This document shows positions 513 to 63,222 of a stretch of DNA of 64,000 nucleotides, piece by piece. The stretch is from positions 62,001 through 126,000 of IMG/VR virus record IMGVR_UViG_3300032116_000001; one strand, given 5' to 3'. Each line of letters begins with the position of its first letter. Positions within the stretch are counted from its first letter, which is position 1. The notes below the pieces were generated by a model, which saw only the letters and a list, made by a program, of their open reading frames with translations, was not told the DNA's origin and did not search any database. The position numbers and the translations under genes were made by a program.

Positions 513-548
513 TTTTATCACCGTGGAGAAGTTATTATATATTTTCTT

Positions 549-1859
549 TTATTGATTATGAATCCCTTCTTTATTTGGTCTTCCGATAGAATAATATTCA
601 TATCCGATTCGTTTCATTTCTTCTTCTTCGAACATATTTCTTCCGTCAAAAATCCGCGGATTTCTCATTTTCTGTTTAATTTCGCGCCATTTAATGTCTT
701 TGAATTCTTTCCATTCTGTAATGATCAGTATCGCGTCTGTGTTTTCGGCTAGTTCTTCGATAGTGTTAGTCCATTGCACATTCGTTAATATTTTTTCAGC
801 ATTATGTTTGGCCACGGGATCATATACTTTAACGATGGCTCCTTCCTTGACAAGTTTTTGAATAATTGGAATTGACCTAGCGTCTCTCATATCATCAGTA
901 TCGGGTTTAAATGCAACTCCGAGCACTCCGATAATTTTGTCATTGACTCCATTGAGATTCGTTTGAATTTTTTGGATAAATTCTTTAGGCATTTGTTCAT
1001 TAATTTCTTTAGTTGCTTTAAGCATTTTGAAATCATATCCGATTTGATCGGCGATATGGATAAGTGCGCTTGTATCTTTCCCGAAGCAGCTTCCACCCCA
1101 TCCTATTCCAGCCCCGAGGAATTTATCTCCGATTCTATGATCGAGTCCCATTCCTCTTGCCACTTCTTTTACATCGGCCCCGACTTGTTCGCATATTTGT
1201 GCAATGGCGTTGATAAAGCTAATTTTCGTGGCGAGGAATGCGTTTGATGCATATTTAATCATTTCGGCGCTAATTGTATCTGTGAGGAAAACTTGTGTTT
1301 GTAGTTCTTGATATGCTTCGATCAATTTCTCCGCGGTTTTCCAGTTATCTGTTCCGATCACGATTCTATCTCCATTCATAGCGTCATGGATTGCGCATCC
1401 TTCTCTAAGGAATTCTGGATTACTTACGACATCGAATGTTGTTGGAAATTTTTGATATTTTTGAATAATTTCTTTGACTCTATGTGCTGTTCCAGGGGGT
1501 ACTGTGGATTTATTCACCACGATGATATGTTCTCTCATGGACTCTCCGATTTCTTTCGCAACATTATCAATATATTGCAGATCGGGGCTGCCGTCTTCTT
1601 TTTCTGGAGTTCCCACGCACACAAAGACAATTTCGCCCCAGTTTGCGGCTTGTTCCACCGTGTTTCCGTAGAATATTTGTGCTTTAGCGTCTTCGATCAT
1701 ATCTTGGAGTTCTGGCTCATAGATAGGGCATTCTCCATTTTTGAGTTTTTTAATTTTTTCTGGATCACTATCTACGCACATAACATCGTGCCCGATGTTT
1801 GCCATGATTGCTGTTTGCACGAGTCCCACATATCCTGCTCCGATCACGCTAATTCTCAT
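549..1859 (-). CDS. ugd: UDP-glucose 6-dehydrogenase
   Basis: Rossmann GAGYVG, CVGTP, NKSTVPPGT, SNPEFLREG, catalytic GGSCFGKD, FKPDTDDMR. Confidence 0.95.
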   Translation of the reverse strand: MRISVIGAGYVGLVQTAIMANIGHDVMCVDSDPEKIKKLKNGECPIYEPELQDMIEDAKAQIFYGNTVEQAANWGEIVFVCVGTPEKEDGSPDLQYIDNVAKEIGESMREHIIVVNKSTVPPGTAHRVKEIIQKYQKFPTTFDVVSNPEFLREGCAIHDAMNGDRIVIGTDNWKTAEKLIEAYQELQTQVFLTDTISAEMIKYASNAFLATKISFINAIAQICEQVGADVKEVARGMGLDHRIGDKFLGAGIGWGGSCFGKDTSALIHIADQIGYDFKMLKATKEINEQMPKEFIQKIQTNLNGVNDKIIGVLGVAFKPDTDDMRDARSIPIIQKLVKEGAIVKVYDPVAKHNAEKILTNVQWTNTIEELAENTDAILIITEWKEFKDIKWREIKQKMRNPRIFDGRNMFEEEEMKRIGYEYYSIGRPNKEGIHNQ

Positions 1860-1922
1860 ATTTACTACTTATACCTTATAATTGCTTATTTTTCCTAATT
1901 GATTATCGTATTACATTTAGTT

Positions 1923-7029: not shown

Positions 7030-7887
7030 TTAAAGCGGTGTTGTGAATCTGGTATATGTTTCAAAGTCAATTTTTGCTTTTGTTATTTGATTAGCGTTCA
7101 TTTGTCTTTCAACATTTTTTCTTATTTGTGTTTGCCCTAGTCCCAGGAATGTTGTTCCTATTTGCAACGATGTTGCGGCAGTTGTTGCAATTAACTGTCC
7201 TGGTTGTTGCAATCTAATATCGAGGTCGCTAAATTGTGCTGGTGTTGCCAGTGCTGTTACGCTTCCGCTGACGTGATATCCCTGTATGCCAAAATAAGGT
7301 GCTTGGCTACCAGTGTTAATTAAATAGTTTTCGCTAATAGTAAAGTTAATGTTTATGCTTCCTGTAAGAATTGCATAAGTTTGTGTTTCTTGTGAATCTT
7401 GTATTGTCAAGAATGTGTCATAAAATCTTGCTACTCGCGATATAAAATCTGGCGGCAAGACATCAACTGCATAGTGTGCATTAAACGCGCCTGGAATGCT
7501 TGACCAAAATTCTAGATCACATGTTACGCCTTCTTGTGCAATATTGATGGTCGCTTGCTTAAGTAGGTAGTTTTCGTTTCCCTGTGTTGTTGGGTCTCTT
7601 AAAAGATTAAAAGAGTATTTAATTAAATCAAAGGCGTCTGTTGTGGTGTCAGATGTATTTGGATTAAGTTCAATAATTAGCGCTGGGGTTTTAATTCGGG
7701 TTATCCACTTAACTCCACCAACGTTCATAACGTGCGTTCCAATATCTCCTTGCATAAGGAGTTTGGGTTCTACTTCTTGTGCTTGGGTTTCGCTCCAGCT
7801 TTCAAACAGCCTAATGAATCCCGCTCCATCGCGGAAATAATACCATGTTGAAATATATTCTGGCGGCAGGATGGGCATATTTTTCAC
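7030..7887 (-). CDS. Hypothetical protein, beta-rich/Thr-rich; possible tail-tube-like virion protein
   Basis: 285-aa ORF preceded by AGGG-N18-GAAA promoter. Structural role is inferred from composition only. Confidence 0.5.
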   Translation of the reverse strand: MKNMPILPPEYISTWYYFRDGAGFIRLFESWSETQAQEVEPKLLMQGDIGTHVMNVGGVKWITRIKTPALIIELNPNTSDTTTDAFDLIKYSFNLLRDPTTQGNENYLLKQATINIAQEGVTCDLEFWSSIPGAFNAHYAVDVLPPDFISRVARFYDTFLTIQDSQETQTYAILTGSININFTISENYLINTGSQAPYFGIQGYHVSGSVTALATPAQFSDLDIRLQQPGQLIATTAATSLQIGTTFLGLGQTQIRKNVERQMNANQITKAKIDFETYTRFTTPL

Positions 7888-7947: not shown

Positions 7948-7973
7948 TTTCCACAGCTTTGTGTTTTTACCCT
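7948..7973 (-). promoter_or_regulatory. SigH-like promoter AGGG-N18-GAAA
   Basis: Upstream of 7030..7887. Confidence 0.55.
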
Positions 7974-11013: not shown

Positions 11014-11039
11014 AGGCCTTTTTTCAAAGAAACAAGAAA
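11014..11039 (+). promoter_or_regulatory. SigH-like promoter AGGC-N18-GAAA
   Basis: Upstream of 11047. Confidence 0.45.
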
Positions 11040-11046
11040 TTAATCT

Positions 11047-11922
11047 TTGATGCACAATGAATGTGCCATCAAAGAGGTTATGATGAAAACACTCGTTCGC
11101 CTCAGTCTAGCAGTGTTGCTAGCATGTTTTATTCCTGTGCTGGGGTATTCGTCCACTCCAAGGGGTGTTATTTATTTTCTTAACGTTCCAGAAACTATTA
11201 AAAAGCCTGGTGTTTTAATGAGCCAAAAAATCAATCCCTTGGAACGATCAAGGATTTTTTGGCATTATAAAAATGCCACGGGGCGAAGCCAGCTGTTTGA
11301 ATTGTCGGCTGATGGCATTGCCAAGCATTACAGGGCTGGATTTCATGTTTCTTCTGTTCCAGCAAACGCGGGAACAGAAGGCATGATGAATTTTCAACGA
11401 TTTCTGCCATCAATCACTGGACAAAGAATTAGTATAAAAGCCTGGGTGCCGTCAGGGTATACAATTTCAGGAGTTGCCGAAGGTGTATGGGACAAGGCGT
11501 CCAATCTTGTGGCAAAATTGGGCGCTGGCCCCGAAGTTGACGGCATTGCGAAGATTATTAGTCAACATCTTTTTTTGGAAGAAAAAATTATTTTTAGCGC
11601 CGCGCAACAAGGTGTGTTTAGAGTGGGCGAAAGCAGGCCAGGGCACATACCTGGTAATTATGGTTCCACGATAAGACTTTGGGCCAGATATTATGGTCCA
11701 ATACGAAAAAAGGCCAGGATATCTTTTAGCCCTCGTGGCGGAAATGCTGTTTTAATTTACAGACTTGACGGCAGGCTTGTGCGCACGTCGAAGGCCAGGG
11801 CCAAATCAGATTATTTTCTTTTTTACAAATGGCTCAATCCAGATGAATCTTTTTATATTGATGTGTACCCGATAGGTGGCTTTAATTATCCATTAGAACT
11901 TCGCGTTCGTGTGGCCAATTAA
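11047..11922 (+). CDS. Secreted hypothetical protein (signal peptide), bacterial-type
   Basis: MKTLVRLSLAVLLACFIPVLGYS signal-like segment; NVPE...FWHYKN...GNYG...SPRGG...GGFNYPL motifs. Confidence 0.6.
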   Translation: MMHNECAIKEVMMKTLVRLSLAVLLACFIPVLGYSSTPRGVIYFLNVPETIKKPGVLMSQKINPLERSRIFWHYKNATGRSQLFELSADGIAKHYRAGFHVSSVPANAGTEGMMNFQRFLPSITGQRISIKAWVPSGYTISGVAEGVWDKASNLVAKLGAGPEVDGIAKIISQHLFLEEKIIFSAAQQGVFRVGESRPGHIPGNYGSTIRLWARYYGPIRKKARISFSPRGGNAVLIYRLDGRLVRTSKARAKSDYFLFYKWLNPDESFYIDVYPIGGFNYPLELRVRVAN

Positions 11923-15592: not shown

Positions 15593-15620
15593 ATTTTCCA
15601 TTATCCTAAACCTGTGCCCT
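15593..15620 (-). promoter_or_regulatory. SigH-like promoter AGGG-N18-GAAAAT
   Basis: Heads the 15586-14669 mini-operon. Confidence 0.5.
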
Positions 15621-30380: not shown

Positions 30381-30406
30381 AGGATTTGACTTTCTTTTAG
30401 CAGAAT
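30381..30406 (+). promoter_or_regulatory. SigH-like promoter AGGA-N18-GAAT upstream of ssb
   Basis: Matches the sigma-H type -35 AGGA / -10 GAAT consensus. Confidence 0.6.
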
Positions 30407-30555: not shown

Positions 30556-31545
30556 ATGGCAAGACGTGTTACGCCAAAAACGTACAAAGAACAACAAACA
30601 TCGCAGTCAAGTGGCCGAAGCTACCCTAAGTTTTCGGACATTATTGTTAACCTTTCGGTTACAAATCTTGAGGTTGGAGAAGACAAGTCGGTACGACTTC
30701 GACTTGTCGGGCTTCCTATTACTTACAAGGAATATAACGACAAAAAGTGGGTCCCTGGACAAAAGGGCAAAACAGAACGTGTTCCTTTCCCTGACGCTCA
30801 TCTTAATAAGTCTTTGACTAGAATTGGGCATGATGATGAATCGCAATGTCCGTGGAAGGCCGAGGGTTATATTGCTTCGGCAAAGTATGCACAAAATGTG
30901 CTTGAGTATGATGCTGAAAATAAGACCTGGGTTCCAAAGATTCTCAACAAGGGGGCATCAATTTTTGATAAGTTCCAGCAATGGACCGATGGTCGCCTTG
31001 AGGAATACGAAGACCTCGACGAAGACGAAGCAGAGGATTTTATTACTCACCTTGGTGTAAGAATGTCGCCATGTGTTCGTATTAAGGCTTTGAAGAAGGG
31101 CGAAAAGGCACATGAAGTCGAGTACACAGTCACGGTTGAGTCAAAGCCCACCCCAATGACTGACGAGATGATTGAAATCCTCCGCAGTGCTGGAGAGCCT
31201 TCGGCGGAGCAAGCGGCAAAGATTCTTGCAGTCTATAAGCAAGATCAAGAAGATGACCCCACAATGCCCGAATGGGAAGACTTTTTTGCGCTTGGGCATG
31301 ATCTCGACCGAATCTTTAAGTTCACGCAAAAGAAGGACGAAGATTCGTCTGAGCCCGAAAAATCCACTTCTGAAGCTTCACTTGATTTGTCTACTGATGA
31401 CAATGACGATGATGATGAGGAAGAGGAAGTCGCAAAGCCAGTCGCAAAGGCCAAGACATCCGCCAAGACTAAGGCAAAGGTGTCTGAACCAGAGCCCAAC
31501 CCGTTTGATGACGAAGACGACGACGATTTGGACTGGACCAAATAA
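30556..31545 (+). CDS. Single-stranded DNA-binding protein, gp32-like
   Basis: VRLRLVG, CP, YAQNVL, KILNKGASIF, EYTV pattern; long acidic tail ending DDDDLDWTK; strong SD AAGGAG; next to RecA. Confidence 0.7.
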   Translation: MARRVTPKTYKEQQTSQSSGRSYPKFSDIIVNLSVTNLEVGEDKSVRLRLVGLPITYKEYNDKKWVPGQKGKTERVPFPDAHLNKSLTRIGHDDESQCPWKAEGYIASAKYAQNVLEYDAENKTWVPKILNKGASIFDKFQQWTDGRLEEYEDLDEDEAEDFITHLGVRMSPCVRIKALKKGEKAHEVEYTVTVESKPTPMTDEMIEILRSAGEPSAEQAAKILAVYKQDQEDDPTMPEWEDFFALGHDLDRIFKFTQKKDEDSSEPEKSTSEASLDLSTDDNDDDDEEEEVAKPVAKAKTSAKTKAKVSEPEPNPFDDEDDDDLDWTK

Positions 31546-31589: not shown

Positions 31590-31624
31590 CTCTACGTAAA
31601 AGGAATTTAATTACAAGAAATATC

Positions 31625-45511: not shown

Positions 45512-45577
45512 AACTTTTTTATTAAACAAAACGTATAAATAAATACGTTGTCTTTAATAAGGCAAGGAAGGAACGAA

Positions 45578-46123
45578 ATAAACAACAACAATAATAATCG
45601 CAAATCGCGGCGAGAGCCGCCTCCGAACATTAATGAGCGTCTTCTCCGATTTGGAGAAATCAGAGTCATTAATGCAGATGGTGATCAAATAGGTATAATG
45701 ACGTCAAGAAAGGCGCTAGACTTGGCCTTGGAAGATGGCCTTGACTTGATTTTAATTGCTGAGTCTGCAAAGCCTCCTGTATGCAAAATTGCCGATTATG
45801 GTAAGCATAAATACATTGAGGCGAAGCGCAAGAAAACAAGCAACAGTAAAAAACCTCAAGAAACCAAGAGTCTTAAAATTAGCCCGAGAATTTCTGATCA
45901 CGATTTAGGTATTACGGCTAAAAAAGCCTCTAACTTTTTGGAGCATGGAGATAAAGTTAGACTAATGTGTTTATTCAAGGCCCGTGAGCTTTCGCACCCA
46001 GCGCTTGGAAAAGAAAGACTGGCAAAGCTTATTGATTGTCTTTCCAGCTCTGCAATACCCGAGGGTGAGCCTTTGTTGGAAGGCAAAGTAATGGCCGTGG
46101 TTTTGCGGCCCAAAGATAATTAA
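45578..46123 (+). CDS. infC: Translation initiation factor IF-3
   Basis: INER...IRVI..DG.QIGIM...LDL..IA..AKPPVCKIADYGKHKY...GDKVR. Probable ATA start at 45578 behind AAGGAAGG; alternative TTG at 45548. Confidence 0.92.
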   Translation: MNNNNNNRKSRREPPPNINERLLRFGEIRVINADGDQIGIMTSRKALDLALEDGLDLILIAESAKPPVCKIADYGKHKYIEAKRKKTSNSKKPQETKSLKISPRISDHDLGITAKKASNFLEHGDKVRLMCLFKARELSHPALGKERLAKLIDCLSSSAIPEGEPLLEGKVMAVVLRPKDN

Positions 46124-46138: not shown

Positions 46139-46180
46139 ACACAAAAAACATCATCTGTAAAAAGATGATGTTTTTTGTGT
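46139..46180 (+). terminator. Terminator after infC
   Basis: ACACAAAAAACATCATCT / AGATGATGTTTTTTGTGT. Confidence 0.7.
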
Positions 46181-47335: not shown

Positions 47336-47409
47336 CTCCTCTGAGGCTTCAAACGACCAGGCAAACATTAATTTGCCACAGGGAGGTTTAAAAGCCGTGA
47401 GGAGCAAAA

Positions 47410-48102
47410 TTGGGACAAGACCTATATATATTACAACTAGTTAGAAGGGCCAAAACTGGAGATGAGCGAGCTTTTTCTAGGCTCCTGGATGAAATAGAGC
47501 CAGACCTTAAAAAGGTCGCTCATCAATATTTTATTCAAGGACAAGACAAAGAAGATGTTCTTCAAGAACTAAGAATTGCAGTCTATAAGGCCGTGGGTTC
47601 CTATGATGAATCCCAAAACACTACGTTTAAAAGCTTTTGCATCAATCTTGTGTGTAAAAGGCATATATCCACGGCAATACATTCTGCACTAAGACACAAA
47701 AACAAAACTCTCAACAATGCAGTATCTCTTGATGCTCCAGTGATAATGGGTGATGATGGAAATATGCAATCTCTATCCGAGTTCATTCCTGACAGAGACA
47801 ATCCTTTGGAAGAAGACCTTGGTGATCGAAATATATTAGACGATTTGATATCCAGAGAGGAGCTTGAGGACAACCGCAAGCTTCTTGCGCCAAGGCTTAC
47901 ATCATTAGAGGGCAGGATTTTTGAGCAATATGGCCACAGCTCTTCGTATAAGGATATTGCAGAGGCATTGGGAATAGAACCCAAATGTGTTGACAATGCT
48001 CTTATGAGGATACGCAAAAAAGCCAGTGAAGTTTTTGACCAAACAGACCCAGGCAGCAATGTCAAAGATAGCGGCCCCAAAAAAAGAAGAAAACGAATTT
48101 AA
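47410..48102 (+). CDS. sigH: RNA polymerase sigma factor, SigH (Spo0H)-like
   Basis: YFIQGQDKEDVLQE...FKSF...KR.I.TAI..A.R.K.K.LN..VSLD...SYKDIAE...KCVDNALMRIRKK; TTG start with SD GAGGAG. Confidence 0.85.
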   Translation: MGQDLYILQLVRRAKTGDERAFSRLLDEIEPDLKKVAHQYFIQGQDKEDVLQELRIAVYKAVGSYDESQNTTFKSFCINLVCKRHISTAIHSALRHKNKTLNNAVSLDAPVIMGDDGNMQSLSEFIPDRDNPLEEDLGDRNILDDLISREELEDNRKLLAPRLTSLEGRIFEQYGHSSSYKDIAEALGIEPKCVDNALMRIRKKASEVFDQTDPGSNVKDSGPKKRRKRI

Positions 48103-49361: not shown

Positions 49362-50469
49362 CAGCCATAATAAGCAATGGGAAAAAGTTTATGTTGTATG
49401 TGGCGATCCTCTATTAAGTAGATTATTTATTCAGGGCATACAAGAAGACTTGAATACGCCATCAAAAAGAACATTTGACAAGGGAGATTCACCTAAGTCC
49501 ATTGTTAATGCACTTAAAGCTTTTGTAATGTTTGATACGCCAGATATGGTGGTGATTTACGACCCAAGCGCAGAGCAGATGCGAACTATTGAATCTTTTT
49601 TGGACGCGGAAGTTATGACAGCTTCCGCGTTGGTAATTGCCACATTGGGGGATTTGCCAGATGGAAGGTCCAAATTTATTCAAAAAGCAGAAAAACAAAA
49701 AAGAGTATTTTTTATGTCGCCGATTGAATACAAGGACACAAAAAGTCTTAAATCACATTTGCTTGAATGGGCGGAAGATGCACAAGTGTCCTTTGATAAA
49801 GACGCAATTAATTGGATATTATCGAATGCTCCTGCATGTGTGGGAAAGATCAAATCACCCAGTGGCAAAAAAGATTGCGAAGTTTATGATTTGCAATCTA
49901 TTGAAAATGAATTAGAAAAAATTAAAGTAATCAATAGCCTGGGAAATTACAAAATATGTGTTGCTGATCTTGAAAAGTATGTAAGATTTGATTATTACAT
50001 TGATATTTGGAGTTTTATTAATGTGGCAATTTCAAATGGCTCAAATGCAGGCGATGCATTAAAAATGATCCAGATTATTGCCAATAGTCAGGGCACTCAA
50101 GCTGCCTTGATCCTATTGGCATCTCAAATAGAATTTTTACTTTGCATTAAGTCATTGCAAAATAGAAATATTCAAAAAGCCGAGGCAATAGCAGAATTCA
50201 TGTCCATGGATTCCTATTTAGGTCGTTATCTTTTGCCCGATTGGACAGAAATTAACGAAATACCAACTTTACCCAAGCCGAATGCATGGCGCATTCGCAA
50301 GGCCATTGAATCGCCGATTCCCTCGACCGAGCGATTATCTTTATTGTATCAATCAGTATTATCGGCCATTCGTGATTTAAGATCGGGGCTGGATGAAAGA
50401 ATTGTTCTTCCGTATCTTGCTCTTTGCCTGGGCGGGCATAATTCCTATATCACACCCCTTAAACAATAG
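49321..50469 (+). CDS. Clamp loader delta (HolA)-like subunit
   Basis: VYVVCGD, DGRSKF, FDKDAINWIL, LQSIENELEKI, IWSFIN pattern. Confidence 0.6.
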   Translation: MQPQMLKMKNQKINSHNKQWEKVYVVCGDPLLSRLFIQGIQEDLNTPSKRTFDKGDSPKSIVNALKAFVMFDTPDMVVIYDPSAEQMRTIESFLDAEVMTASALVIATLGDLPDGRSKFIQKAEKQKRVFFMSPIEYKDTKSLKSHLLEWAEDAQVSFDKDAINWILSNAPACVGKIKSPSGKKDCEVYDLQSIENELEKIKVINSLGNYKICVADLEKYVRFDYYIDIWSFINVAISNGSNAGDALKMIQIIANSQGTQAALILLASQIEFLLCIKSLQNRNIQKAEAIAEFMSMDSYLGRYLLPDWTEINEIPTLPKPNAWRIRKAIESPIPSTERLSLLYQSVLSAIRDLRSGLDERIVLPYLALCLGGHNSYITPLKQ

Positions 50470-50529
50470 GTTCAAATCTTAGATTTGAAGAATTATATTG
50501 AGGAATTAATAAGTTTCGGAGGTAGTTTT

Positions 50530-51120
50530 GTGGAAGCCCATTATCAATATATTAATGATTTAGTAACAAAATCACAAAATGGGGACACAAATGCTTTGTC
50601 AGATATTGCAGAATTTTATAGCCCGCTCATATCTGCATCTATCCAAAGATGTATTCTTAGAGAACCCAGGCTTTTGAGATTCAAAGAAGATGTTGAAGCA
50701 GAAGTTTTTTTAATCCTTAAAAAGCTTGTAGAGAATTACGATCCCAATTTGTCTTATTTTTCTTATTATATATCCACTCGTTTAGATTATGCAATTATCA
50801 ATCAGTGTAGGCAAACAATCCTGGGCCTTAAATCTAATTCTCGATTCTGTGAGGAAGTTTCTTTTTCTGATATATCAGAAGATTTAGATATTGTCAACCA
50901 TGATGATCCTTTTGGTAAAATTCATGTTGCGCAGGCAATTCAAGGGGCGATTGATAAATTGAATCCTCGACAAAAAGAAGCAATAGAAGCTTACTTTTTT
51001 GACAACTTAACTCAGCAAGAAGCCGCGAAAAAACTTGGCATTACACAAGCTTCGTTTTGTAAAAGGCTTCAGCGAGGCCTGAACAGCATGAGAGAATTAT
51101 TATCCGAAGATTTTATTTAA
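50530..51120 (+). CDS. Sigma-70 family factor (regions 2 and 4)
   Basis: YSPLI, EDVEAE, YDPNLSYFSYYI, LNPRQKEAI...LTQQEAAKKLGITQ; GTG start with SD GGAGGT. Confidence 0.85.
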   Translation: MEAHYQYINDLVTKSQNGDTNALSDIAEFYSPLISASIQRCILREPRLLRFKEDVEAEVFLILKKLVENYDPNLSYFSYYISTRLDYAIINQCRQTILGLKSNSRFCEEVSFSDISEDLDIVNHDDPFGKIHVAQAIQGAIDKLNPRQKEAIEAYFFDNLTQQEAAKKLGITQASFCKRLQRGLNSMRELLSEDFI

Positions 51121-51297
51121 CAAAAGGAATATTTTTCACAATTTAATCCAACTATATTTCTATGCCGCATATTTTTATGGCAAATTTTGTCATAAAAATA
51201 TATTAACATATGTTTTAGCAGGATTTTGCTCAATCAATATGAAAATATATTATGCGGAGTATTTGAGGGACAATCCTTCGCCAAGGAGATTCAAGAC

Positions 51298-52896: not shown

Positions 52897-55800
52897 ATGA
52901 AAAAAGGCAGGCCGTCAAAGCCCGAATATTTAAAGCAAGATAAAAAAACATCTCTAATGCAGCAACTAGCGGCGCTAGAAGATAGTTTTAAAAATCAAGG
53001 ATATGAGGGCGAATATGATGATGAAATTATGCCCAGTGTTCGGGCCGAAGTGATGCCTCCGCCAACGCCAGAAAAAACTAATTATAATCCTGATCAAATC
53101 GTAGATATTGTTACATTTATGGAGCATCCTTATTTTTGTAACCTTAAGCCATATCCGTGGCAAAGGCTTATATTAAAGTGTTTTTATATGGGCCAAGAAG
53201 GCAATACAAATTTAGAAATTCAGGATGTTGACCAAGATGTTCGGGAATCTGGAACTTGTGATGGATGTGTTTGGAAATATGTCCGTAACGATGAAGAAAA
53301 AGTTTACAAAGGCAGAAAAGATGGGAAGCAATTAAGAAATATATTTTCTGTTGTTAACTCTCCGTGTTTAACATGTGAACGATTTGATGACACCTTGCGA
53401 GAAGATAGGTACGTTGCAGCAAGGCACGAGGCAACAAACCCAGACGATTCCAGAAAGATTGACAATCTTATTAAGAGGCCCATATCTGATAATTATGAGA
53501 CAGAATATGATCTTTTGCATGCATCTGAATTTGACCCATTGCTAAGAAAGCAAGTTTTAGACAAATGCACAAATCGTTATAAGTTTCAAGAATTGATTCT
53601 TGTTTTAGGCAGAAGATCGGGCAAGGCCTTGGCCTTAGATACTCCTGTGCTCACTACTAAAGGATGGAAGACTATGGGCACATTGCAAGTCGGCGATTAC
53701 GTGTTTGGCGACGATGGATTTCCCACACGCATCATTGCGGCCACAGAACCTATGGAAGGGCGAATATGCTACAGGATGAGATTCTCCAATGGAGACACAA
53801 TCGTGGCCGATGAACAACATCAGTGGCGTGTCGTAAGCAAGCGCGAGCGCAAAAATCAGCCACGCGCTCGGATTCCTCGCGAGCTGCGCCAAGAAATCAA
53901 AACAACCAAAGAAATAGCTCAAACGCTTTTACATGGACGTTCCCGCACAATAGTGGATTGCAAAACGGGGAAATCTCGCATTATGGGCGCAGAGAGGAAT
54001 TGGTCCGTGGAATTAGCTTCACCTTTGCAAATGCCAGAGGCCGATCTACCTATTGCTCCCTACCTAATGGGAGCTTGGTTAGGAGACGGCTGTTCAACAC
54101 ACGGTCATATAACTAGCAACACAATCGAAGTAATAGATCGCATTCGTGAAACAACTTCCTATAATCCATGGAAGCAAGCTTGCAATCCGTTTGGTTACTG
54201 CATCGGTAAGGACGCAAACGAAGTTTCTTTCAAGGAAAGGCTTCGAGATTTGGGGCTGCTTGGCAAGGGTCGAAAACACATACCTACCGCATATCTTCTT
54301 GCTTCAGAACATCAGCGATTAGAGTTGTTGCGCGGATTGGTGGATACAGATGGTCACGTTTGCGCAAGATCGGGCCGTATCGAGATAACAACTGTTTATG
54401 ACGATCTTGCACGAGGCATTCACTCGCTTGTGTGCTCACTTGGGCAGAAAGCCACCATTTTAACGGGTGATGCTACGCTTAATGGCAAGTTTGTTTCCAA
54501 AAAATACCGCATCTGTTTTACGCCTAGAAATGGATTATTGCCAGCCACACTGTCATACAAGCGGGATCGCGTTAGTCATGCTAAAAAGTCTGATGTCGGT
54601 CGTATATTCATTGAAAAGGTTGAAAAATTGGCGGAATCAGTGCCTGTCCGCTGCATTCAAGTAGATAATGCAAGTAATATGTTCCTGGCTGGCAAAAGTC
54701 TAGTGCCGACGCACAACAGCTTTCTTGTCTCTGTGATGGCTCTTTACGAGTTGTACCGACTGCTTGCAATGGGTCACCCCCAGGCTCGATACGGCTTGAT
54801 GGAGTTTGATGAAATAGTCTTGCTTAATGTGGCCCGAAACGAAGAGCAGGCCAAAAAAGCCATCTTTTCCAAAATCAAACAAACGGTTCTGGCTTCGCCA
54901 TTTTTCCAGCCCTATGTTGGAAAAGACACAGAGCTGGAAATGCGATTCTTTACCGATCATGACAAAAAAGAAAATGAACGTCGGGCCGAAAATGGAATTA
55001 ATTTATTTTCTGGTTCATTAGTACTTAGATGTGGCTCTTCTAATGCCTCTGGATTGGTGGGATTAACTTGTTGGTCAATCATCATGGACGAGGTTGCAGC
55101 CATGGCAGGAGATAATCCTGATTCTGGCCTAGACTATGCACTATATGATGATTTAAAGCCCTCGGGCGCTACCTTTGGTAAAGATTTCAAAATGATGATG
55201 CTATCCAACCCAAAGGGTCCGATAGGGTTGCTTTACGATCTGCATGAAAATCGCCAAGATGATCCGACAACACTTGTAATGCGGCTTGCAACCTGGTTGA
55301 CAAACCCCAGCATCGACCAAGAGTGGCTTGAAGAACAAAAGCGCAAAGACCCCACTGAGTTCCAGATGCAATTTGGTGCAGAATTTGGGGCTGCATCAAG
55401 TGATCCGATGTTCACAGTGGATCAAGTGAATGGCATGTGGGCTATGACCTCAACAACGCCACGGGCCGAACATGGCCAGCCGCTTATTGAATATTACGCT
55501 CACCTTGATCCAGCGAGAACAAGCGACTATTATGCATTAGTGGTCTCTCACGCTGAACAAATTTATCCAATTCAAATCGGGCCAGATAATAAGCCATTAA
55601 AGCGAGTTGTTATTGATCATATACATTTTTGGAATCCCCGCACAAAGAATCAGCCCGTCTCTGAAAAAGAAGTGGAAGATTATTTAATAGAATTGCATCA
55701 AAAATTTAAGTTTAAGCAAGTAAGTTTTGACCAATGGCATAGTCAATCATCAATCATTAGACTAAAGAGCATGGGCATTAATGCCGTTGAAAGACAATTT

Positions 55801-56121
55801 AATCAAGAATACAAAGGAAAAATTTATTCTGAATTAATGCAATTAATCAGAGAACAAAGAATAGATATTTATGGAATTTCTGGTGGCACCTATCAAGATG
55901 CCAAGGGCGTGGTTCAAGACCTTAACGAAATTGCTGAGGCTAAAATTCAATTTACATTTTTGCAAAAAGTTTGGAAAGGCAAAAGATTTGAGATCAAAGC
56001 ACTGTCTGGATACAAAGACGACATATGTGATGCTGTTGCGGCAGCGGCATATGAATGTTTGACGGCAAGGGTGCTAAGCAGTTTTCCAAAATCGAGAGTG
56101 GCCAGAACTGGCGCTAGATAA
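52897..56121 (+). CDS. terL: Terminase large subunit, intein-containing
   Basis: YPWQ, Walker A GRRSGK|S, IMDEVA, LSNP, QFGAEF, HLDPA, SFDQW, KDDICDAVA. Confidence 0.9.
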   Translation: MKKGRPSKPEYLKQDKKTSLMQQLAALEDSFKNQGYEGEYDDEIMPSVRAEVMPPPTPEKTNYNPDQIVDIVTFMEHPYFCNLKPYPWQRLILKCFYMGQEGNTNLEIQDVDQDVRESGTCDGCVWKYVRNDEEKVYKGRKDGKQLRNIFSVVNSPCLTCERFDDTLREDRYVAARHEATNPDDSRKIDNLIKRPISDNYETEYDLLHASEFDPLLRKQVLDKCTNRYKFQELILVLGRRSGKALALDTPVLTTKGWKTMGTLQVGDYVFGDDGFPTRIIAATEPMEGRICYRMRFSNGDTIVADEQHQWRVVSKRERKNQPRARIPRELRQEIKTTKEIAQTLLHGRSRTIVDCKTGKSRIMGAERNWSVELASPLQMPEADLPIAPYLMGAWLGDGCSTHGHITSNTIEVIDRIRETTSYNPWKQACNPFGYCIGKDANEVSFKERLRDLGLLGKGRKHIPTAYLLASEHQRLELLRGLVDTDGHVCARSGRIEITTVYDDLARGIHSLVCSLGQKATILTGDATLNGKFVSKKYRICFTPRNGLLPATLSYKRDRVSHAKKSDVGRIFIEKVEKLAESVPVRCIQVDNASNMFLAGKSLVPTHNSFLVSVMALYELYRLLAMGHPQARYGLMEFDEIVLLNVARNEEQAKKAIFSKIKQTVLASPFFQPYVGKDTELEMRFFTDHDKKENERRAENGINLFSGSLVLRCGSSNASGLVGLTCWSIIMDEVAAMAGDNPDSGLDYALYDDLKPSGATFGKDFKMMMLSNPKGPIGLLYDLHENRQDDPTTLVMRLATWLTNPSIDQEWLEEQKRKDPTEFQMQFGAEFGAASSDPMFTVDQVNGMWAMTSTTPRAEHGQPLIEYYAHLDPARTSDYYALVVSHAEQIYPIQIGPDNKPLKRVVIDHIHFWNPRTKNQPVSEKEVEDYLIELHQKFKFKQVSFDQWHSQSSIIRLKSMGINAVERQFNQEYKGKIYSELMQLIREQRIDIYGISGGTYQDAKGVVQDLNEIAEAKIQFTFLQKVWKGKRFEIKALSGYKDDICDAVAAAAYECLTARVLSSFPKSRVARTGAR
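53626..54717 (+). mobile_element. Class 3 intein (364 aa) with LAGLIDADG homing endonuclease, in the TerL P-loop
   Basis: Starts ALALDTPV (Ala1); block B ADEQHQW; LAGLIDADG motifs GAWLGDG and LRGLVDTDG; block F VRCIQV; ends PTHN|S. Confidence 0.92.
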
Positions 56122-56141: not shown

Positions 56142-56167
56142 AGGATATTTTAGCGATCAGGTAGAAT
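56142..56167 (+). promoter_or_regulatory. SigH-like promoter AGGA-N18-GAAT
   Basis: Intergenic after terL; same spacing as the other copies. Confidence 0.65.
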
Positions 56168-56206: not shown

Positions 56207-57301
56207 ATGTCAACAAACAAGTCTAGTCAAGGCCCAATGGAACGCCAATCACAATATGGTGGGGTTGGCGGAGGGCAATCTCCTTTTGCGCCTGGGGGCT
56301 CGCCGATGGGCAGAGGCTACGGGTCTGGTGGTGGCTTAGATATAAATAAATACGTGGTGGACGAAAGTTTCGACGCGGTTCTTGAGCAAGTACACAATCC
56401 TGCGCCGATTGACCCCGAAAGAAATATTGAAAAAAGACTTGAAGAACAACATGTTTTTGCCGAGGAAAATGCAATACCTTATGATCTTAGTTTTGAAGAG
56501 CGACAAAGATTAAAAATTAGGAATGAAATTAGAAGAAGAGAACAATTTTACGAAGATGCGGCAAAAAGCATTGCCAAAAACTCCCCATCTTACATCCAAA
56601 ATAATTTCCAGCCTAGTGAATCTCATATTACACCCTTTAATGTCCTGTTGCAATCGAGACGAAAAAACAATGACGAATCATACGTAAGAGACCCAAGAGA
56701 GGATGATATCCCGCCCCAAATTAAACCAACAAGATATCATCCTGTTTTGTCCAGTAATGGCCATGATCGATTGGCTTATTTAATAAGCAGGCCAAATGAA
56801 ATTAATGACGAAGATTCAGATGAAGTAAACTGGGCCAACAAAGCGCGTGTGACATTTCCGCTTGGACTTGGGAGCACCCCCGTTTTAAATTTAGGTTCAG
56901 AACTTGATGAATATTTAGATCAAGTTTCAAAACAAAATTGGGGCGGGCAAAAAAGCACGTCAAACGAGCCGTCTGTTGGATTTGACTTTCATGAGCCAGA
57001 TGAATTCACATTATTGCACGAACCAGACACAAAAAACCTGCCATCAAGCATTGGTGAACTGGCTGAAGATGTAGTTAATGGCATGGGAAGACTTGATAAA
57101 GAAAATGATTATGGAATTGTTGACAGCCCATTTGTTACACTTGAGGCAAAGTTAGAAGCCACAAATCGCGCCGAGCCAGAGAGAAGCCCCAGCGACGTAT
57201 TTCCAGGCAATAAGTGGCAACTACACAAAGATGAGCCCGCAGGCATATTGGATAGCTATCAGCAAAAATTTGAGGGCCAGGGCTCTCCTTGGAAAATTTA
57301 A
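56207..57301 (+). CDS. Hypothetical late protein (Gly-rich N-terminus, low complexity)
   Basis: 364 aa; AGGA-N18-GAAT promoter and GGGAG SD upstream. Confidence 0.7.
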   Translation: MSTNKSSQGPMERQSQYGGVGGGQSPFAPGGSPMGRGYGSGGGLDINKYVVDESFDAVLEQVHNPAPIDPERNIEKRLEEQHVFAEENAIPYDLSFEERQRLKIRNEIRRREQFYEDAAKSIAKNSPSYIQNNFQPSESHITPFNVLLQSRRKNNDESYVRDPREDDIPPQIKPTRYHPVLSSNGHDRLAYLISRPNEINDEDSDEVNWANKARVTFPLGLGSTPVLNLGSELDEYLDQVSKQNWGGQKSTSNEPSVGFDFHEPDEFTLLHEPDTKNLPSSIGELAEDVVNGMGRLDKENDYGIVDSPFVTLEAKLEATNRAEPERSPSDVFPGNKWQLHKDEPAGILDSYQQKFEGQGSPWKI

Positions 57302-58956: not shown

Positions 58957-58982
58957 AGGACAAAACTATTTTTGTGCAGAAA
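58957..58982 (+). promoter_or_regulatory. SigH-like promoter AGGA-N18-GAAA
   Basis: Intergenic, upstream of 59014. Confidence 0.6.
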
Positions 58983-59013: not shown

Positions 59014-59538
59014 ATGCCCTATCCCATTAAACCCGTTCATAAACTTGATCTTCATGAAGAAATTTTTGATTCTCCCAGCATTGAGGCAGATTTAGCATCG
59101 ATATCTGCATTGCAAATGCAGTTTTTTGGTAATTCTGGGGTCCGAGAAGCCAAAGTAAAGTTATCTGACAGAATGATTGAAATGCTAAGGGCTATTGAAC
59201 AATCTCAGGATGAAATTGTTACCGCAGCCCAATCATTAACAACTTTGAATAAAACTGGTGATGCAATTTACAGAGTCCCAATGTCAATCACTGATCATGA
59301 TTTACTTGGGCTGAAAACAGCTGAACTGGTGCGGGGCCATGGCCGTGCCGTGACTCTTACAGAAAAGGGGCGCATTGCCTTGCGCGATCATTATCTAAAT
59401 CAGCCTGTTAATGAATTTAGAAAGGCTAGAACCAAGCCTAAATTTGATCTAAATGCTGCTCAAGCTATAACGGCGTCAAACGAAAGTGCCCGAGTTGCTA
59501 CTGCTTCTAAGTTTAGACGCAGCAATGATGTAGAATAA
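59014..59538 (+). CDS. Winged-helix-like protein
   Basis: LxGLKTAELV....VTLTEKGR wing motif; AGGA-N18-GAAA promoter. Confidence 0.55.
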   Translation: MPYPIKPVHKLDLHEEIFDSPSIEADLASISALQMQFFGNSGVREAKVKLSDRMIEMLRAIEQSQDEIVTAAQSLTTLNKTGDAIYRVPMSITDHDLLGLKTAELVRGHGRAVTLTEKGRIALRDHYLNQPVNEFRKARTKPKFDLNAAQAITASNESARVATASKFRRSNDVE

Positions 59539-60333: not shown

Positions 60334-60355
60334 CATTCAAAAAGGAAAACAATCC

Positions 60356-62722
60356 ATGAAATTTCAACGTAATTATTGTCCCTCGATAAGTCAAATTCTC
60401 TCAGATGAAAGCCTAAAGCGATTATCGGCTATAACAGCATATTTAAATTTGTATTCTACAGGAGACAATACAAGTAATGCTAATTTTCGCCTAAGTTCAA
60501 GCTTGGAGTCAATGAAGAGAATTATAATCTCGTCTGAAATTGAAACATTACATCGCAAGACTGTTAAAGAGGATATTGATCGCATTAAGCATGCCTTGAA
60601 AAAAGCTTACTCTTTGGGTAAAGAATCATATGAAGCCTATGTTGACGCAAATAGTTCTGAAATTATAGCAGCGTTCTGGGCATGGATGATGACCCAAAAG
60701 CAATCTTTGTTTACAGGCATTAGTAATCAAAATAAATCTCTTTTAAGGAATTATCATGTCGGGCAAAGCGAGATCGATGACATGATCGAAGCGGCCATAC
60801 ACGAATTTATCACTCGGACAGAAGGAAAAACTAATCTTCTTGCGTCTGTTAAAAACTGGTCGCCTAGCGGAGGCGCAGATTTACATACATGGGTTCTTAA
60901 TGGTGCTAAAAACATGTTGGATATCACTGTCACCAAGCAAAGGCACCAAATCGTTAATCGCGGCAAATCTCTGGACGAAAATCTTAAAGGAAAAGACGGC
61001 GATGGAGACTCGCTTGGTGATATGATTGTTGATCCAAAATCCTCAACAGATGCAAAAGAATCTTATGATATTACAAACTATGACGAATTAGTTGAAGCTT
61101 TTGTGGAGGCCTTGCCTGAAAAAATTAGCGAACAGCCAGATTATATACGTGGGTTAATTGATAGAGGATTTAGGGCCATGAAGGTTCAGGCACAAAATGC
61201 AGAAGACCCCGAAAGTGAAAATAATTTTTACGAAATGTCCTTAAAGACTGCTAATGAGCTTTTTCAAAATGTTATGAATAGCTTTGAAGAGCTTAAGCGC
61301 TCTGTAAAAGTGATGATTTCAGACAAAACTGATGAAAATAGAGAAATTGCCATGAAGGCAAGAGAAGCTTATGACAGGCGTGTTTATTCACTGTTGAGAA
61401 ATTTGGTTGAGTCCTTTAATCCAAGTATAGCAAATAAAAAGAAAACTCAAAGAAATTTAAGCAATGTGGATGAGAATAACAAGGAAAACGAAAACAATTT
61501 CATTGACAATGAAGACAAGCAAGTTAACCAAGCCCCAAAAATTCGTTCCAGAGACTTGATTAAACCCGAAGATGAAGTCGGCAAAGAGACGGCGACTCCA
61601 GAAGAACTTATGGTAAGAAAAATGAAGCTGGACGAATTCAGAAAACAGCTTTTGCCATATTATTATCAAGTCGGTTCATTCCCAAAAACCAAATATAGAG
61701 ATGGTAAAATAACGCCATATGCCCTTAGTGAATATGGAATTGGATTAATTAGACCATACACACACTTTTTTTCAGGCATAGATTCGCCCGAAGACATAAA
61801 AGCTATGTTTGGCACTGACGAGGACAAAATAAATTCCCTGTCTCCCACAGCTTTATTTTCTCGGTTGCTAATTGAGAGTGGCTTAAAGGCTCATGAGGAC
61901 TACACCCTTGAAAACAAATTTAAAGTTCCAGGGTCAACAATGGGCAAAAACGAAGTTCAAAGATTTAGGGATTATTTCATTGACCAAATTGACACCAATC
62001 CAATGTTTACAAGACACAAAGATGTGCTTTTGCAAATGCTAGAAAGTTTCTTTTTAAACAAAAACAACAAACCATCTGATGAAAAAGTAAAAGAAATGAT
62101 CGAAAACCTTGATGCTCATACACGAATGGCCTCTTATGAGTGGGCTAGACATCAGTTAATGGGCGGTGATGGTGAACCGAAAGCATGGGCAGATTTAAGC
62201 CCTGATGAACTCAAGGCCATTGCTGTGAAGGCCTGGGAATCTTTATACGCTGATGGTTTTAGACTTTTTAGAATTCAAGAAATTAATGAACGTGGCGAGC
62301 CACATAGAAAAGGCCCTGTTATGCCATTGAGCAGATGGGTTAAGCCCGATGTCTTTTTGCCAATTATGGAAGAGGAAGTAAACAATATACAACGCATGCA
62401 GGCCAACAAAGCGGCAGTTAAAAAGGGTTATAGCCCCATTGCACAACGAAGCCGACTTGACCCCAGTATTAATCTTCAGAATATTGGTCAAAAAAGGCGT
62501 GAGATTTTGGACATTGCTAGAAATAATCAGGAAGTTCAGCAAAGCGATGTGCCTAAAACCTTTATCGAAGACAACTCTGTTGAGGATTCTAAAGATGCGT
62601 TGCAGTCACATGCAAGTGTGCTAGATAGAATGCTTCTCAAAATTAGTTCCATGGAGCAATCTGGTGATTACAAAAATGCAGACATTGAAATGTCAAGGCT
62701 AGAATCTATTTTAAGAGGATAA
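60356..62722 (+). CDS. Large protein with sigma region 2/3-like segment and C-terminal tag
   Basis: DDMIEAA...LHTWVLNGAKNMLD...KSLDENL...GDSLGDMIVD; C-terminal MEQSGDYKNAD. Confidence 0.6.
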   Translation: MKFQRNYCPSISQILSDESLKRLSAITAYLNLYSTGDNTSNANFRLSSSLESMKRIIISSEIETLHRKTVKEDIDRIKHALKKAYSLGKESYEAYVDANSSEIIAAFWAWMMTQKQSLFTGISNQNKSLLRNYHVGQSEIDDMIEAAIHEFITRTEGKTNLLASVKNWSPSGGADLHTWVLNGAKNMLDITVTKQRHQIVNRGKSLDENLKGKDGDGDSLGDMIVDPKSSTDAKESYDITNYDELVEAFVEALPEKISEQPDYIRGLIDRGFRAMKVQAQNAEDPESENNFYEMSLKTANELFQNVMNSFEELKRSVKVMISDKTDENREIAMKAREAYDRRVYSLLRNLVESFNPSIANKKKTQRNLSNVDENNKENENNFIDNEDKQVNQAPKIRSRDLIKPEDEVGKETATPEELMVRKMKLDEFRKQLLPYYYQVGSFPKTKYRDGKITPYALSEYGIGLIRPYTHFFSGIDSPEDIKAMFGTDEDKINSLSPTALFSRLLIESGLKAHEDYTLENKFKVPGSTMGKNEVQRFRDYFIDQIDTNPMFTRHKDVLLQMLESFFLNKNNKPSDEKVKEMIENLDAHTRMASYEWARHQLMGGDGEPKAWADLSPDELKAIAVKAWESLYADGFRLFRIQEINERGEPHRKGPVMPLSRWVKPDVFLPIMEEEVNNIQRMQANKAAVKKGYSPIAQRSRLDPSINLQNIGQKRREILDIARNNQEVQQSDVPKTFIEDNSVEDSKDALQSHASVLDRMLLKISSMEQSGDYKNADIEMSRLESILRG

Positions 62723-62727
62723 AAATC

Positions 62728-63222
62728 ATGACAGAGGGCACAAAATTTAGAATAAGATTTGTTGCTGACAATGATGAAAAAAGAACCAAGGGGCTCATGC
62801 ATGCAGAGCCCCTTGAAGATGATGAAGTTGTTCTTTTTATATTCCCTCATCCAGATAGATATGGTTTTTGGAATAAGAATGTTTCTTTTGGATTAAGTCT
62901 GGCATTTTGTGACGCCAATGGTAAAATTGTACATTTTTCAGACATGAAGCCTAATGACCCAACAAAAGTTGGACCAGAAAACGATAATGTAATGTTTGTG
63001 GTTGAGGCTAAAGAAGGGGCTTTTTCAAAGATCGGCGCGAAGAAAGGTGATCTAATCAATTACTCTAATAATTTACTCACTGTGCACAAGACATCATCAA
63101 GGCATGCTCAAAATAATGAAAAAAATAATTTTCAAAAAAATGGCATTAAAAAAACAGGTATAGACATTAACAAGTTGGAAGTTAATCTTTTAGCAGGGTC
63201 TCTTAAGGAGGACTATAAATAA
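62728..63222 (+). CDS. DUF192 family protein
   Basis: VAD...R.KGLM....L...VLFIF......FWNKNV...L...F.D..G.IV...VVE. Confidence 0.85.
   Translation: MTEGTKFRIRFVADNDEKRTKGLMHAEPLEDDEVVLFIFPHPDRYGFWNKNVSFGLSLAFCDANGKIVHFSDMKPNDPTKVGPENDNVMFVVEAKEGAFSKIGAKKGDLINYSNNLLTVHKTSSRHAQNNEKNNFQKNGIKKTGIDINKLEVNLLAGSLKEDYK
63156..63181 (+). promoter_or_regulatory. SigH-like promoter AGGT-N18-GAAG
   Basis: Upstream of the strong-SD gene at 63224. Confidence 0.55.

What the first reader, a model, noticed from the sequence alone, without database searches (positions are those of the whole stretch)
543..63181. SigH-type promoter (AGG-N19-GAAW) at about 13 sites defines a probable late regulon read by the phage SigH-like factor
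Seen, plus strand: 11014 AGGC-N18-GAAA, 30381 AGGA-N18-GAAT, 51220 AGGA-N17-GAAAAT, 56142 AGGA-N18-GAAT, 58430 AGGA-N18-GGAT, 58957 AGGA-N18-GAAA, 60309 AGGC-N18-TAACAT, 63156 AGGT-N18-GAAG. Minus strand: 567 AGGG-N17-GAAAAT, 7973 AGGG-N18-GAAA, 10337 AGGT-N18-TAACAT, 15620 AGGG-N18-GAAAAT, 44134 AGGT-N18-CAAAT. All lie shortly upstream of starts, mostly of tagged or structural-type genes. Known: Bacillus sigma-H recognises AGGA/GAAT boxes. Inference: the phage sigma at 47410 is the late sigma factor. Caveat: the motif is short and I looked for it only near gene starts.
Basis: partly seen in the sequence, partly recalled or inferred. Interest (0 to 1): 0.7.

Follow-up and report, generated by a model that had tools for sequence, protein, structure and literature searches.

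The report
Sigma-H-type promoters of a jumbo phage
A strict two-block signal (AGG, exactly 19 bases, GAA) marks about 30-40 gene starts in this 379-kb uncultivated freshwater phage and its relatives; it is most likely the promoter read by the phage's own sigma-H-like factor, but it is a broad middle-to-late class rather than a purely late one.

Summary
All 13 strings are at the stated coordinates, but only the exact form AGG-N19-GAA is more than chance.

- **Enrichment.** In oriented upstream DNA of the whole 378,848-bp genome, outside the first 60 kb, it occurs 38 times. Other spacings average about 6. It is the top dyad in an unbiased scan.
- **Strictness.** N18, N20 and every single-base variant are not enriched.
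Seven fit: 7973-, 11014+, 15620-, 30381+, 56142+, 58957+, 63156+. Six do not: 567, 10337, 44134, 51220, 58430, 60309. One strict site was missed: 50468, in front of the second sigma gene.
- **Conservation.** The N19 spike recurs in three related phage genomes (33-55% GC), upstream of orthologous genes.
- **Which sigma.** The motif equals the invariant core and spacing of the Bacillus/Listeria sigma-H consensus. The protein at 47410 is specifically sigma-H-like. The other two phage sigmas are not, and both of their genes carry the motif, which suggests a cascade.
- **"Late" is not supported.** Downstream genes include a RecA operon, RNA ligase, a CCA-adding enzyme, PhoH and the sigma genes, as well as head and tail genes.
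- **Untested.** No transcription start data exist, and the host is unknown.

The parts
47410..48102 (+). sigma1: sigma-H-like phage sigma factor (230 aa), proposed reader of the motif. It lies between the clamp-loader and beta-clamp genes and has no AGG-N19-GAA in front of it.
   Evidence: Pfam Sigma70_r2 and r4_2. NCBIfam's top five hits are sigma-H models at 86-112 bits, all below their cut-offs. 31.5% identity to Listeria SigH, E 1e-31. Shared recognition helix. PDB profile best hit 3mzy, sigma-H, E 6e-19. Upstream sequence read.
50485..51120 (+). sigma2: second phage sigma factor of generic sigma-70/ECF type. Its likely start is the GTG at 50530. It is a target of the motif.
   Evidence: Pfam Sigma70_r4. 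NCBIfam gives only the generic superfamily. E 0.25 against Listeria SigH.
50468..50492 (+).
   Evidence: The orthologous site AGGTTCAA...GAAGAA is conserved in the 55%-GC relative.
56142..56166 (+). Strict site (AGGA...CAGGTAGAAT) upstream of gene 56207-57301.
   Evidence: Orthologs in G001 and G004 carry a strict site.
58957..58981 (+). Strict site upstream of gene 59014-59538.
   Evidence: The ortholog in G004 carries a strict site.
63156..63180 (+). Strict site inside the 3' end of gene 62728-63222, upstream of gene 63224 onward.
   Evidence: Orthologs in G001, G002 and G004 all carry a strict site.
30381..30405 (+). Strict site 150 nt upstream of gene 30556-31545, which is followed 25 nt later by RecA (31571-32869).
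   Evidence: Strict sites lie upstream of the orthologs in G001 and G002.
11014..11038 (+). Strict site in the divergent intergenic region upstream of gene 11083-11922.
   Evidence: Not conserved in G001 or G002.
7949..7973 (-). Strict site upstream of gene 7030-7887(-).
   Evidence: Not conserved in G001 or G002.
15596..15620 (-). Strict site with an ATG 9 nt after GAA (leaderless type), for the small gene ending at 15386(-).
   Evidence: Not conserved in G001 or G002.
51220..51243 (+). Off-spacing (N18) candidate upstream of gene 51226/51298-52023. Possibly functional.
   Evidence: N18 is not enriched, but the orthologous position in G004 holds a strict N19 site within clearly homologous flanks.

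Best explanation
AGG-N19-GAA(W) is a promoter class specific to this phage and its relatives.

**Proposed mechanism**
1. sigma1 (window 47410-48102) is a sigma-H-like factor made from the replication-gene cluster.
2. It binds host core RNA polymerase.
3. Its region-4 helix reads AGG at -35, and region 2 reads GAA(W) at -10, exactly 19 nt downstream.
4. Transcription starts about 9-10 nt after GAA. In roughly a quarter of cases this falls on the ATG itself, giving a leaderless mRNA. Otherwise the leader is at least 19 nt and carries a Shine-Dalgarno sequence.

**Regulon**
- About 30-40 promoters across genome 62-379 kb, with 8 strict sites in the window.
- It includes the genes of the two other phage sigmas. 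sigma1 would therefore head a cascade that covers middle and some late functions, not only virion genes.

**Shown versus inferred**
- Shown: the motif's statistics, its strictness, its conservation in relatives and upstream of orthologs, and the sigma-H likeness of sigma1.
- Inferred: that it is a promoter, where transcription starts, which sigma reads it, and when.
For: **Motif statistics**
- Top spacing-specific dyad in an unbiased scan: 38 against 6.
- No spike in coding DNA or in the first 60 kb.
- Orientation bias of 38 sense against 16 antisense.

**Conservation**
- The same N19 spike appears in relatives: G001 20 against about 7, G002 14 against about 6, G004 7 against about 1.8. As pre-specified tests, p = 4e-5, 3e-3 and 3e-3.
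- Orthologous genes keep the motif: Fisher p = 0.001, 0.008 and 1e-4.

**Start-site proxy**
- The GAA-to-ATG distance is bimodal. Sites fall at 5-13 nt (peak 9-10) or at 19 nt and beyond, with none at 14-18.

**Match to sigma-H**
- The consensus RMAGGRWWW-N11-12-RRMGAAW (PMC4754846) equals AGG-N18/19-GAAW.
- sigma1's best matches are sigma-H models and structure.
- sigma1 shares the helix K-x-[VI]-DNAL-x-R-[IV]-[RK]-KK with Listeria SigH. sigma2 and sigma3 do not.

**Cascade**
- sigma2 and sigma3 are each preceded by the motif. sigma1 is not.
Against: - There are no transcription start or expression data, and no RNA run was listed.
- sigma1 scores far below every sigma-H cut-off (105 against 294.8 bits; 112 against 212).
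- The bases flanking AGG and GAA carry little information, about 13-14 bits in all, so individual sites cannot be called with certainty. About 6 of the 38 are expected by chance.
- sigma1, sigma2 and the motif always occur together in the relatives examined, so phyletic pattern cannot say which sigma reads it.
- The host is unknown, so a host sigma cannot be excluded.
- Three window sites (7973, 11014, 15620) are not conserved in the distant relatives.
Confidence: 0.6

Rival explanations
1. The motif is a real promoter class but is read by another phage sigma: sigma2 (window 50485-51120) or sigma3 (genome 302715-303413). That factor would then autoregulate.
For: sigma2 co-occurs with sigma1 and with the motif in every relative examined. 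Both sigma2 and sigma3 carry the motif upstream, which would fit positive autoregulation.
Against: Neither resembles sigma-H. Against Listeria SigH the E-values are 0.25 and 1e-10, compared with 1e-31 for sigma1. Their region-4 helices differ. NCBIfam gives them only generic or FliA-like matches. The motif matches the sigma-H consensus, not ECF or FliA consensus sequences.
Confidence: 0.15
2. The motif is read by a host alternative sigma of the sigma-H type. The phage sigma1 would then have another or a redundant role.
For: The motif equals the bacterial sigma-H core consensus. The host is unidentified, so a sigma-H-bearing host cannot be excluded.
Against: The sigma1 family is 100% viral in the Atlas clusters. 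It is syntenic in more than 50 phage contigs. The motif spike follows these phages across 33-55% GC. These phages are common in freshwater metagenomes, whereas the sigma-H family is described as a Firmicutes family (PMC3364868). Carrying a conserved sigma-H-like gene would be unnecessary if the host factor were enough.
Confidence: 0.12
3. The signal is not a promoter. It would be the bipartite binding site of a phage regulator, or an RNA-level signal.
For: Only six bases are fixed, and there is no direct evidence of transcription initiation.
Against: - The spacing is that of -35 and -10 elements.
- The sites are oriented toward genes.
- The GAA-to-ATG distance is bimodal with a forbidden 14-18 nt zone, as expected for leaderless or Shine-Dalgarno-bearing transcripts.
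- The match to a known sigma consensus is exact.
- The sites have no dyad symmetry.
Confidence: 0.06
4. The motif is a chance pattern produced by looking only near gene starts.
For: The whole-window count is below the shuffle expectation.
Against: Corrected p is about 1.5e-12 in the genome. The spike replicates in three relatives, and the motif is kept upstream of orthologs.
Confidence: 0.01

Closest known systems
Sigma-H (Spo0H/SigH) promoters of Bacillus subtilis and Listeria monocytogenes, consensus RMAGGRWWW-N11-12-RRMGAAW (PMC4754846)
   Same: The invariant AGG and GAA(W) cores are the same. The AGG-to-GAA distance of 19 nt is the long end of the 18-19 range. There is a weak preference for R and M before AGG. 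The factor has only sigma-2 and sigma-4 domains, and its region-4 helix is shared with Listeria SigH.
   Different: Only N19 is used; N18 is not enriched. There is no purine or A/T preference after AGG. Position -2 before GAA prefers pyrimidine rather than purine. The factor is phage-encoded, about 31% identical to SigH, and below all equivalog cut-offs. The regulon consists of phage genes. Many transcripts appear leaderless.
Phage-encoded sigma cascades that redirect host RNA polymerase, such as Bacillus phage SPO1 with its middle and late sigma factors (PMC9429907); the sigma names gp28 and gp33/34 are from my own knowledge
   Same: Several phage sigma genes are present. There is a promoter class distinct from the host housekeeping type. 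Genes for later sigmas appear to sit behind the promoter of an earlier one.
   Different: The sigma family and promoter sequence differ. The lineage is different: uncultivated freshwater jumbo phages with a bacterial-type Pol III replisome. Temporal order has not been measured.
Sigma factors of jumbo phages in general (Iyer et al. 2021, PMC7824862)
   Same: Jumbo phages that lack their own RNA polymerase encode sigma factors to recruit the host core enzyme.
   Different: That survey does not mention SigH (no occurrence of the term). Here the cognate promoter and regulon can be read from the sequence.

Membership tests
Sigma-H-type promoter (RMAGGRWWW-N11-12-RRMGAAW) | Invariant AGG in the -35 block and GAA(A/T) in the -10 block | tested here: met
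   Only exact AGG and GAA are enriched. All 18 single-base variants are at background. The fourth base is A or T in 32 of 38 sites.
Sigma-H-type promoter (RMAGGRWWW-N11-12-RRMGAAW) | 18-19 nt between AGG and GAA | tested here: met
   N19 gives 38 sites against about 6. N18 gives 9, which is background. Only the longer spacing is used.
Sigma-H-type promoter (RMAGGRWWW-N11-12-RRMGAAW) | Flanking preferences: R M before AGG, R W W W after it, R R M before GAA | tested here: inconclusive
   Before AGG: position -2 is A or G in 26 of 38 and position -1 is A or C in 27 of 38. After AGG there is no preference. Position -1 before GAA is A or C in 24 of 38, but position -2 is C or T in 29 of 38.
Sigma-H-type promoter (RMAGGRWWW-N11-12-RRMGAAW) | Transcription starts a few bases downstream of the -10 block and depends on the sigma factor | not testable with these tools
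   No RNA run was listed. The only evidence is indirect: ATG clusters 9-10 nt after GAA and no sites fall at 14-18 nt.
Bacterial SigH/Spo0H equivalog (TIGR02859, NF006145-8) | Score above the curated cut-off of a sigma-H model | tested here: not met
   111.6 bits against a cut-off of 212, and 105.3 against 294.8. As a control, Listeria SigH scores 396.5 against 212.
Bacterial SigH/Spo0H equivalog (TIGR02859, NF006145-8) | Closer to sigma-H than to any other sigma subfamily | tested here: met
   The five best NCBIfam hits are sigma-H models at 86-112 bits. The next hit is the generic superfamily at 59 bits, and the others are below 40. The PDB profile search gives 3mzy sigma-H at E 6e-19 and the next hit at 2e-5.
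Bacterial SigH/Spo0H equivalog (TIGR02859, NF006145-8) | Conserved region-4 recognition helix and the R-x-K-N/H-x-x-LN-x-x-x-SLD-x-P segment | tested here: met
   Alignment with Listeria SigH shows KCVDNALMRIRKK against KAIDNALQRVKKK, and RHKNKTLNNAVSLDAP against RQKNIPLNNSVSLDTP. These residues are invariant in 27 phage homologs.
Phage sigma cascade (SPO1-like logic) | Genes for later sigma factors lie behind the promoter class of an earlier phage sigma | tested here: inconclusive
   Strict sites precede sigma2 (50468) and sigma3 (genome 302702) but not sigma1. The sigma2 site is conserved in G004 but not in G001 or G002. No expression data exist.
Late (virion-gene) regulon | Targets are predominantly structural or lysis genes | tested here: not met
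   Targets include the RecA operon, RNA ligase, tRNA nucleotidyltransferase, PhoH, a transposase and two sigma genes. They also include a prohead-protease-domain protein, a minor-tail operon and a weak baseplate-hub match. The window targets have no PHROG hits.

The most novel reading that the evidence does not exclude
A widespread clade of uncultivated freshwater jumbo phages, with more than 50 contigs and genomes of 300-380 kb, may run its development on a three-sigma cascade. A virus-only branch of the sigma-H family would head it, using a six-base promoter of exact spacing (AGG-N19-GAA). Much of the output would be leaderless mRNA, possibly in hosts outside the Firmicutes, where sigma-H-type recognition has not been described.
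Probability: 0.3. Interest if true: 0.6.

Novelty: new member of a known kind. Interest (0 to 1): 0.5.

Why it matters
The result gives a sequence-level handle on gene regulation in an abundant but uncultivated jumbo-phage lineage: a promoter class, a candidate regulon, a candidate reader and a possible sigma cascade.

It extends sigma-H-type promoter recognition to a virus-only branch of the family.

It also yields a compact, strict promoter and sigma pair that can be tested in vitro without culturing the phage.

For annotation, the strict motif together with the ATG 9-10 nt after GAA helps to fix gene starts and operon boundaries in these genomes.

Tried and rejected
1. **Loose motif versions.** N18, N20 and single mismatches are not enriched.
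2. **Sigma-70-type promoter scan of 42-61 kb.** It found 55 matches against 49.9 expected, which is uninformative.
3. **Near-identity DNA search in the phage collection.** No match.
4. **Pooled +/-10 kb loci of 51 relatives.** No clear N19 spike (12 against about 8), because few sites lie there and the loci are not independent. Whole genomes were needed.
5. **An independent gut contig with a sigma-H-like gene (MT835476).** No spike. It is probably not comparable.
6. **RNA runs for start-site mapping.** None was listed, and read laying was not used.
7. **Complex prediction of sigma1 with promoter DNA.** The tool did not fold it, so it counts neither for nor against binding.
8. **Host identification.** Only one mis-binnable 7-kb contig in a 'Bacteroidetes' MAG was found, which is not evidence of the host.
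9. **'Moraphage' paper (PMC12619734).** It appears to describe a different lineage that lacks much of this phage's gene machinery.
Full report
**Context**

The window is bases 62001-126000 of a single 378,848-bp IMG/VR virus record, rated complete. Near-identical DNA is held in many freshwater metagenome runs.

The window is mainly a replication, recombination and nucleotide-metabolism module:
- an SbcC-like ATPase, an AAA ATPase, a DnaB-type helicase, Pol III alpha and RecA;
- a clamp loader and a beta clamp;
- by synteny with a relative, RecJ, ribonucleotide reductase and dUTPase.

It also holds two sigma-factor genes, at 47410-48102 (sigma1) and 50485-51120 (sigma2). A third, sigma3, lies outside the window at genome 302715-303413.

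**Check of the observation**

The pattern is short, however. AGG-N19-GAA anywhere in the window occurs 26 times against 33.9 +/- 6.1 in shuffles.

I called genes across the genome with a codon-usage model. I then counted AGG-Nx-GAAW for spacers of 10-29. Only N19 stands out, and only in non-coding DNA: 41 hits against about 12.

An unbiased scan covered all 3-mer pairs at spacers 8-30, in oriented upstream regions beyond the first 60 kb. AGG-N19-GAA was the top dyad:
- 38 sense hits against a mean of 6.0 at other spacers, z = 12.1, and 16 antisense;
- Poisson p = 1.6e-17, about 1.5e-12 after correction for 94,208 tests.

The motif is strict. N18 (9), N20 (4) and all 18 single-base variants are at background. 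Outside the six fixed bases there is little information. The fourth base of the -10 block is A or T in 32 of 38 sites, and the -10 block weakly reads Y-A-GAA-W. The first 60 kb shows no spike. The window alone shows 5 at N19 against about 0.9.

|---|---|---|
| 7973-, 11014+, 15620-, 30381+, 56142+, 58957+, 63156+ | strict N19 | fits the supported form |
| 567-, 51220+ | N18 | does not fit |
| 58430+ | GGA in place of GAA | does not fit |
| 60309+, 10337- | TAA in place of GAA | does not fit |
| 44134- | CAA in place of GAA | does not fit |

A strict site at 50468+, just upstream of sigma2, was missed.

**Comparative evidence**

sigma1 has hundreds of homologs at 52-77% identity. All those examined lie in phage contigs with the same gene order: clamp loader, sigma1, clamp, an unknown gene, then sigma2.

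I fetched three relatives whole. Each shows the N19 spike in upstream DNA; p-values are.

| Relative | Size | GC | N19 count | Other spacers | p |
|---|---|---|---|---|---|
| G001 | 358 kb | 33.7% | 20 | about 7 | 4e-5 |
| G002 | 316 kb | 33.3% | 14 | about 6 | 3e-3 |
| G004 | 46-kb fragment | 54.6% | 7 | about 1.8 | 3e-3 |

Reciprocal-best-hit orthologs keep the motif far more often than expected:
- G001: 10 shared genes, p = 0.001;
- G002: 8 shared genes, p = 0.008;
- G004: 5 of 5, p = 1e-4.

Conservation of the window sites:
- 63156 is conserved in all three relatives.
- 56142 is conserved in G001 and G004.
- 30381 is conserved in G001 and G002.
- 58957 and 50468 are conserved in G004.
- The off-spacing 51220 site aligns with a strict N19 site in G004, so it may still work.
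- The four base-variant sites have no conserved counterpart.

**What it is**

The signal behaves as a promoter. It points toward genes. Its geometry is that of -35 and -10 elements.

The distance from GAA to the next ATG is bimodal across the four genomes. Sites cluster at 5-13 nt, with a peak at 9-10, or lie at 19 nt and beyond. None falls at 14-18 nt. ATG at 8-13 nt occurs in 18 of 79 sites, against 37 of 384 for control spacers (p = 0.002).

This fits a start about 9-10 nt after GAA, giving either a leaderless mRNA or a leader long enough for a Shine-Dalgarno sequence. It is an inference. No RNA run was listed.

**Who reads it**

The published sigma-H consensus is (A/G)(A/C)AGG(A/G)(A/T)(A/T)(A/T)-N11-12-(A/G)(A/G)(A/C)GAA(A/T) (PMC4754846). 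This is AGG-N18/19-GAAW. The phage motif therefore equals its invariant core at the longer spacing.

sigma1 is specifically sigma-H-like:
- Its five best NCBIfam matches are sigma-H models at 86-112 bits. The next is the generic superfamily at 59 bits. All are below their equivalog cut-offs.
- A profile of 27 homologs finds PDB 3mzy, 'RNA polymerase sigma-H factor', at E 6e-19. The next chain is at 2e-5.
- A Listeria SigH recovered from a phage-collection contig was confirmed at 396 bits against a cut-off of 212. It aligns with sigma1 at 31.5% identity over 200 residues, E 1e-31. The same comparison gives E 0.25 for sigma2 and 1e-10 for sigma3.
- The region-4 recognition helix (KCVDNALMRIRKK against KAIDNALQRVKKK) and the RxKNxxLNxxVSLDxP segment are shared. 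Both are invariant in the phage family.

sigma2 and sigma3 each have a strict site in front of them, and sigma1 does not. This fits a cascade headed by sigma1. It does not exclude autoregulation by sigma2 or sigma3, or reading by a host factor. The host is unknown. The only bacterial hit was a 7-kb contig binned as a Bacteroidetes MAG.

**Is it a late regulon?**

No.

Non-structural targets outside the window:
- a transposase, an RNA ligase, a tRNA nucleotidyltransferase, a protease and PhoH;
- sigma3.

Structural or possibly structural targets outside the window:
- a 1426-aa protein with a prohead-protease domain, next to the portal gene;
- an operon ending in a minor tail protein;
- a weak baseplate-hub match.

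In the window, the targets are genes without PHROG matches, sigma2, and the gene directly upstream of RecA. The class is best described as the general sigma1-dependent class, covering middle and some late genes. Timing has not been measured.

**Comparison and novelty**

Phage sigma factors that redirect the host core enzyme, and multi-sigma phages such as SPO1 and SP10, are well known (PMC7824862; PMC9429907). This is a new member of that kind:
- It is a virus-only branch of the sigma-H family; the Atlas clusters are 100% viral.
- Its cognate promoter and regulon can be read from sequence.
- It belongs to a widespread uncultivated jumbo-phage clade.

It is not a SigH equivalog, because the cut-offs are not met. 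It most likely works like one.

**Limits**

- Gene starts come from my own simple caller.
- About 6 of the 38 genome-wide sites are expected by chance.
- Sites 7973, 11014 and 15620 lack support from conservation.
- Complex prediction did not fold the protein-DNA pair, so it gives no evidence.

Noticed in passing
outside the window: genome 1.9-59.5 kb (both strands): About 45 copies of a highly conserved block, AAAAAT(C)CC..T.T-N11-ATCGGATATATAA, with an ATG 3-4 nt after TATATAA and no room for a Shine-Dalgarno sequence. It sits in front of about 100 small genes. It looks like a second, very uniform promoter class giving leaderless mRNAs, possibly early genes. The same sequence is absent from relatives G001, G002 and G004.
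   Followed up: partly
window 7019(-), 11927(+), 52109(+), 57309(+); 18 intergenic copies genome-wide: (T)TGTATAA is enriched in upstream DNA: 16 copies against 1.5 expected, and 1 antisense. It resembles an extended -10 element. Several copies have an ATG 6-12 nt downstream, including one at the portal gene. Others are followed by hairpins. It may be a third promoter class.
   Followed up: partly
window 53653-54718 (inside gene 52897-56121): Residues 253-607 of this 1074-aa protein carry a LAGLIDADG homing-endonuclease domain. They are absent from the 703-713-aa orthologs in three relatives, whose flanks are 56-88% identical. This looks like an intein insertion.
   Followed up: partly
window 47360-47377: A hairpin, GGCAAA-CATTAA-TTTGCC, lies just upstream of the sigma1 ribosome-binding site. 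The 55%-GC relative has AGCAAA...TTTGCT at the same place, a compensatory G-C to A-U change. Fold z-score is -2.1. It may control sigma1 translation or mRNA stability.
   Followed up: partly
window 46143-46176: A strong terminator-like hairpin with a T run lies between gene 45548-46123 and the clamp-loader gene. It implies a separate, unidentified promoter for the clamp loader, sigma1 and clamp unit. CTATAAAT lies 25 nt upstream of the clamp-loader start.
   Followed up: no
outside the window: genome 302715-303413: A third sigma factor (sigma3). Its best subfamily match is FliA/WhiG at 60 bits, below the cut-off. A strict AGG-N19-GAA site at 302702 precedes it.
   Followed up: partly
relatives L011-L047, upstream of an ortholog near locus position 6870: In the 33%-GC relatives, several genes start with TGGTAAAAT-N7-ATG, an extended -10-like element followed by an ATG. 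This suggests that leaderless starts are common across the clade.
   Followed up: no
window 549-1859(-); genome 290577-292217: The phage encodes a UDP-glucose/GDP-mannose dehydrogenase and a GroEL-type chaperonin.
   Followed up: no
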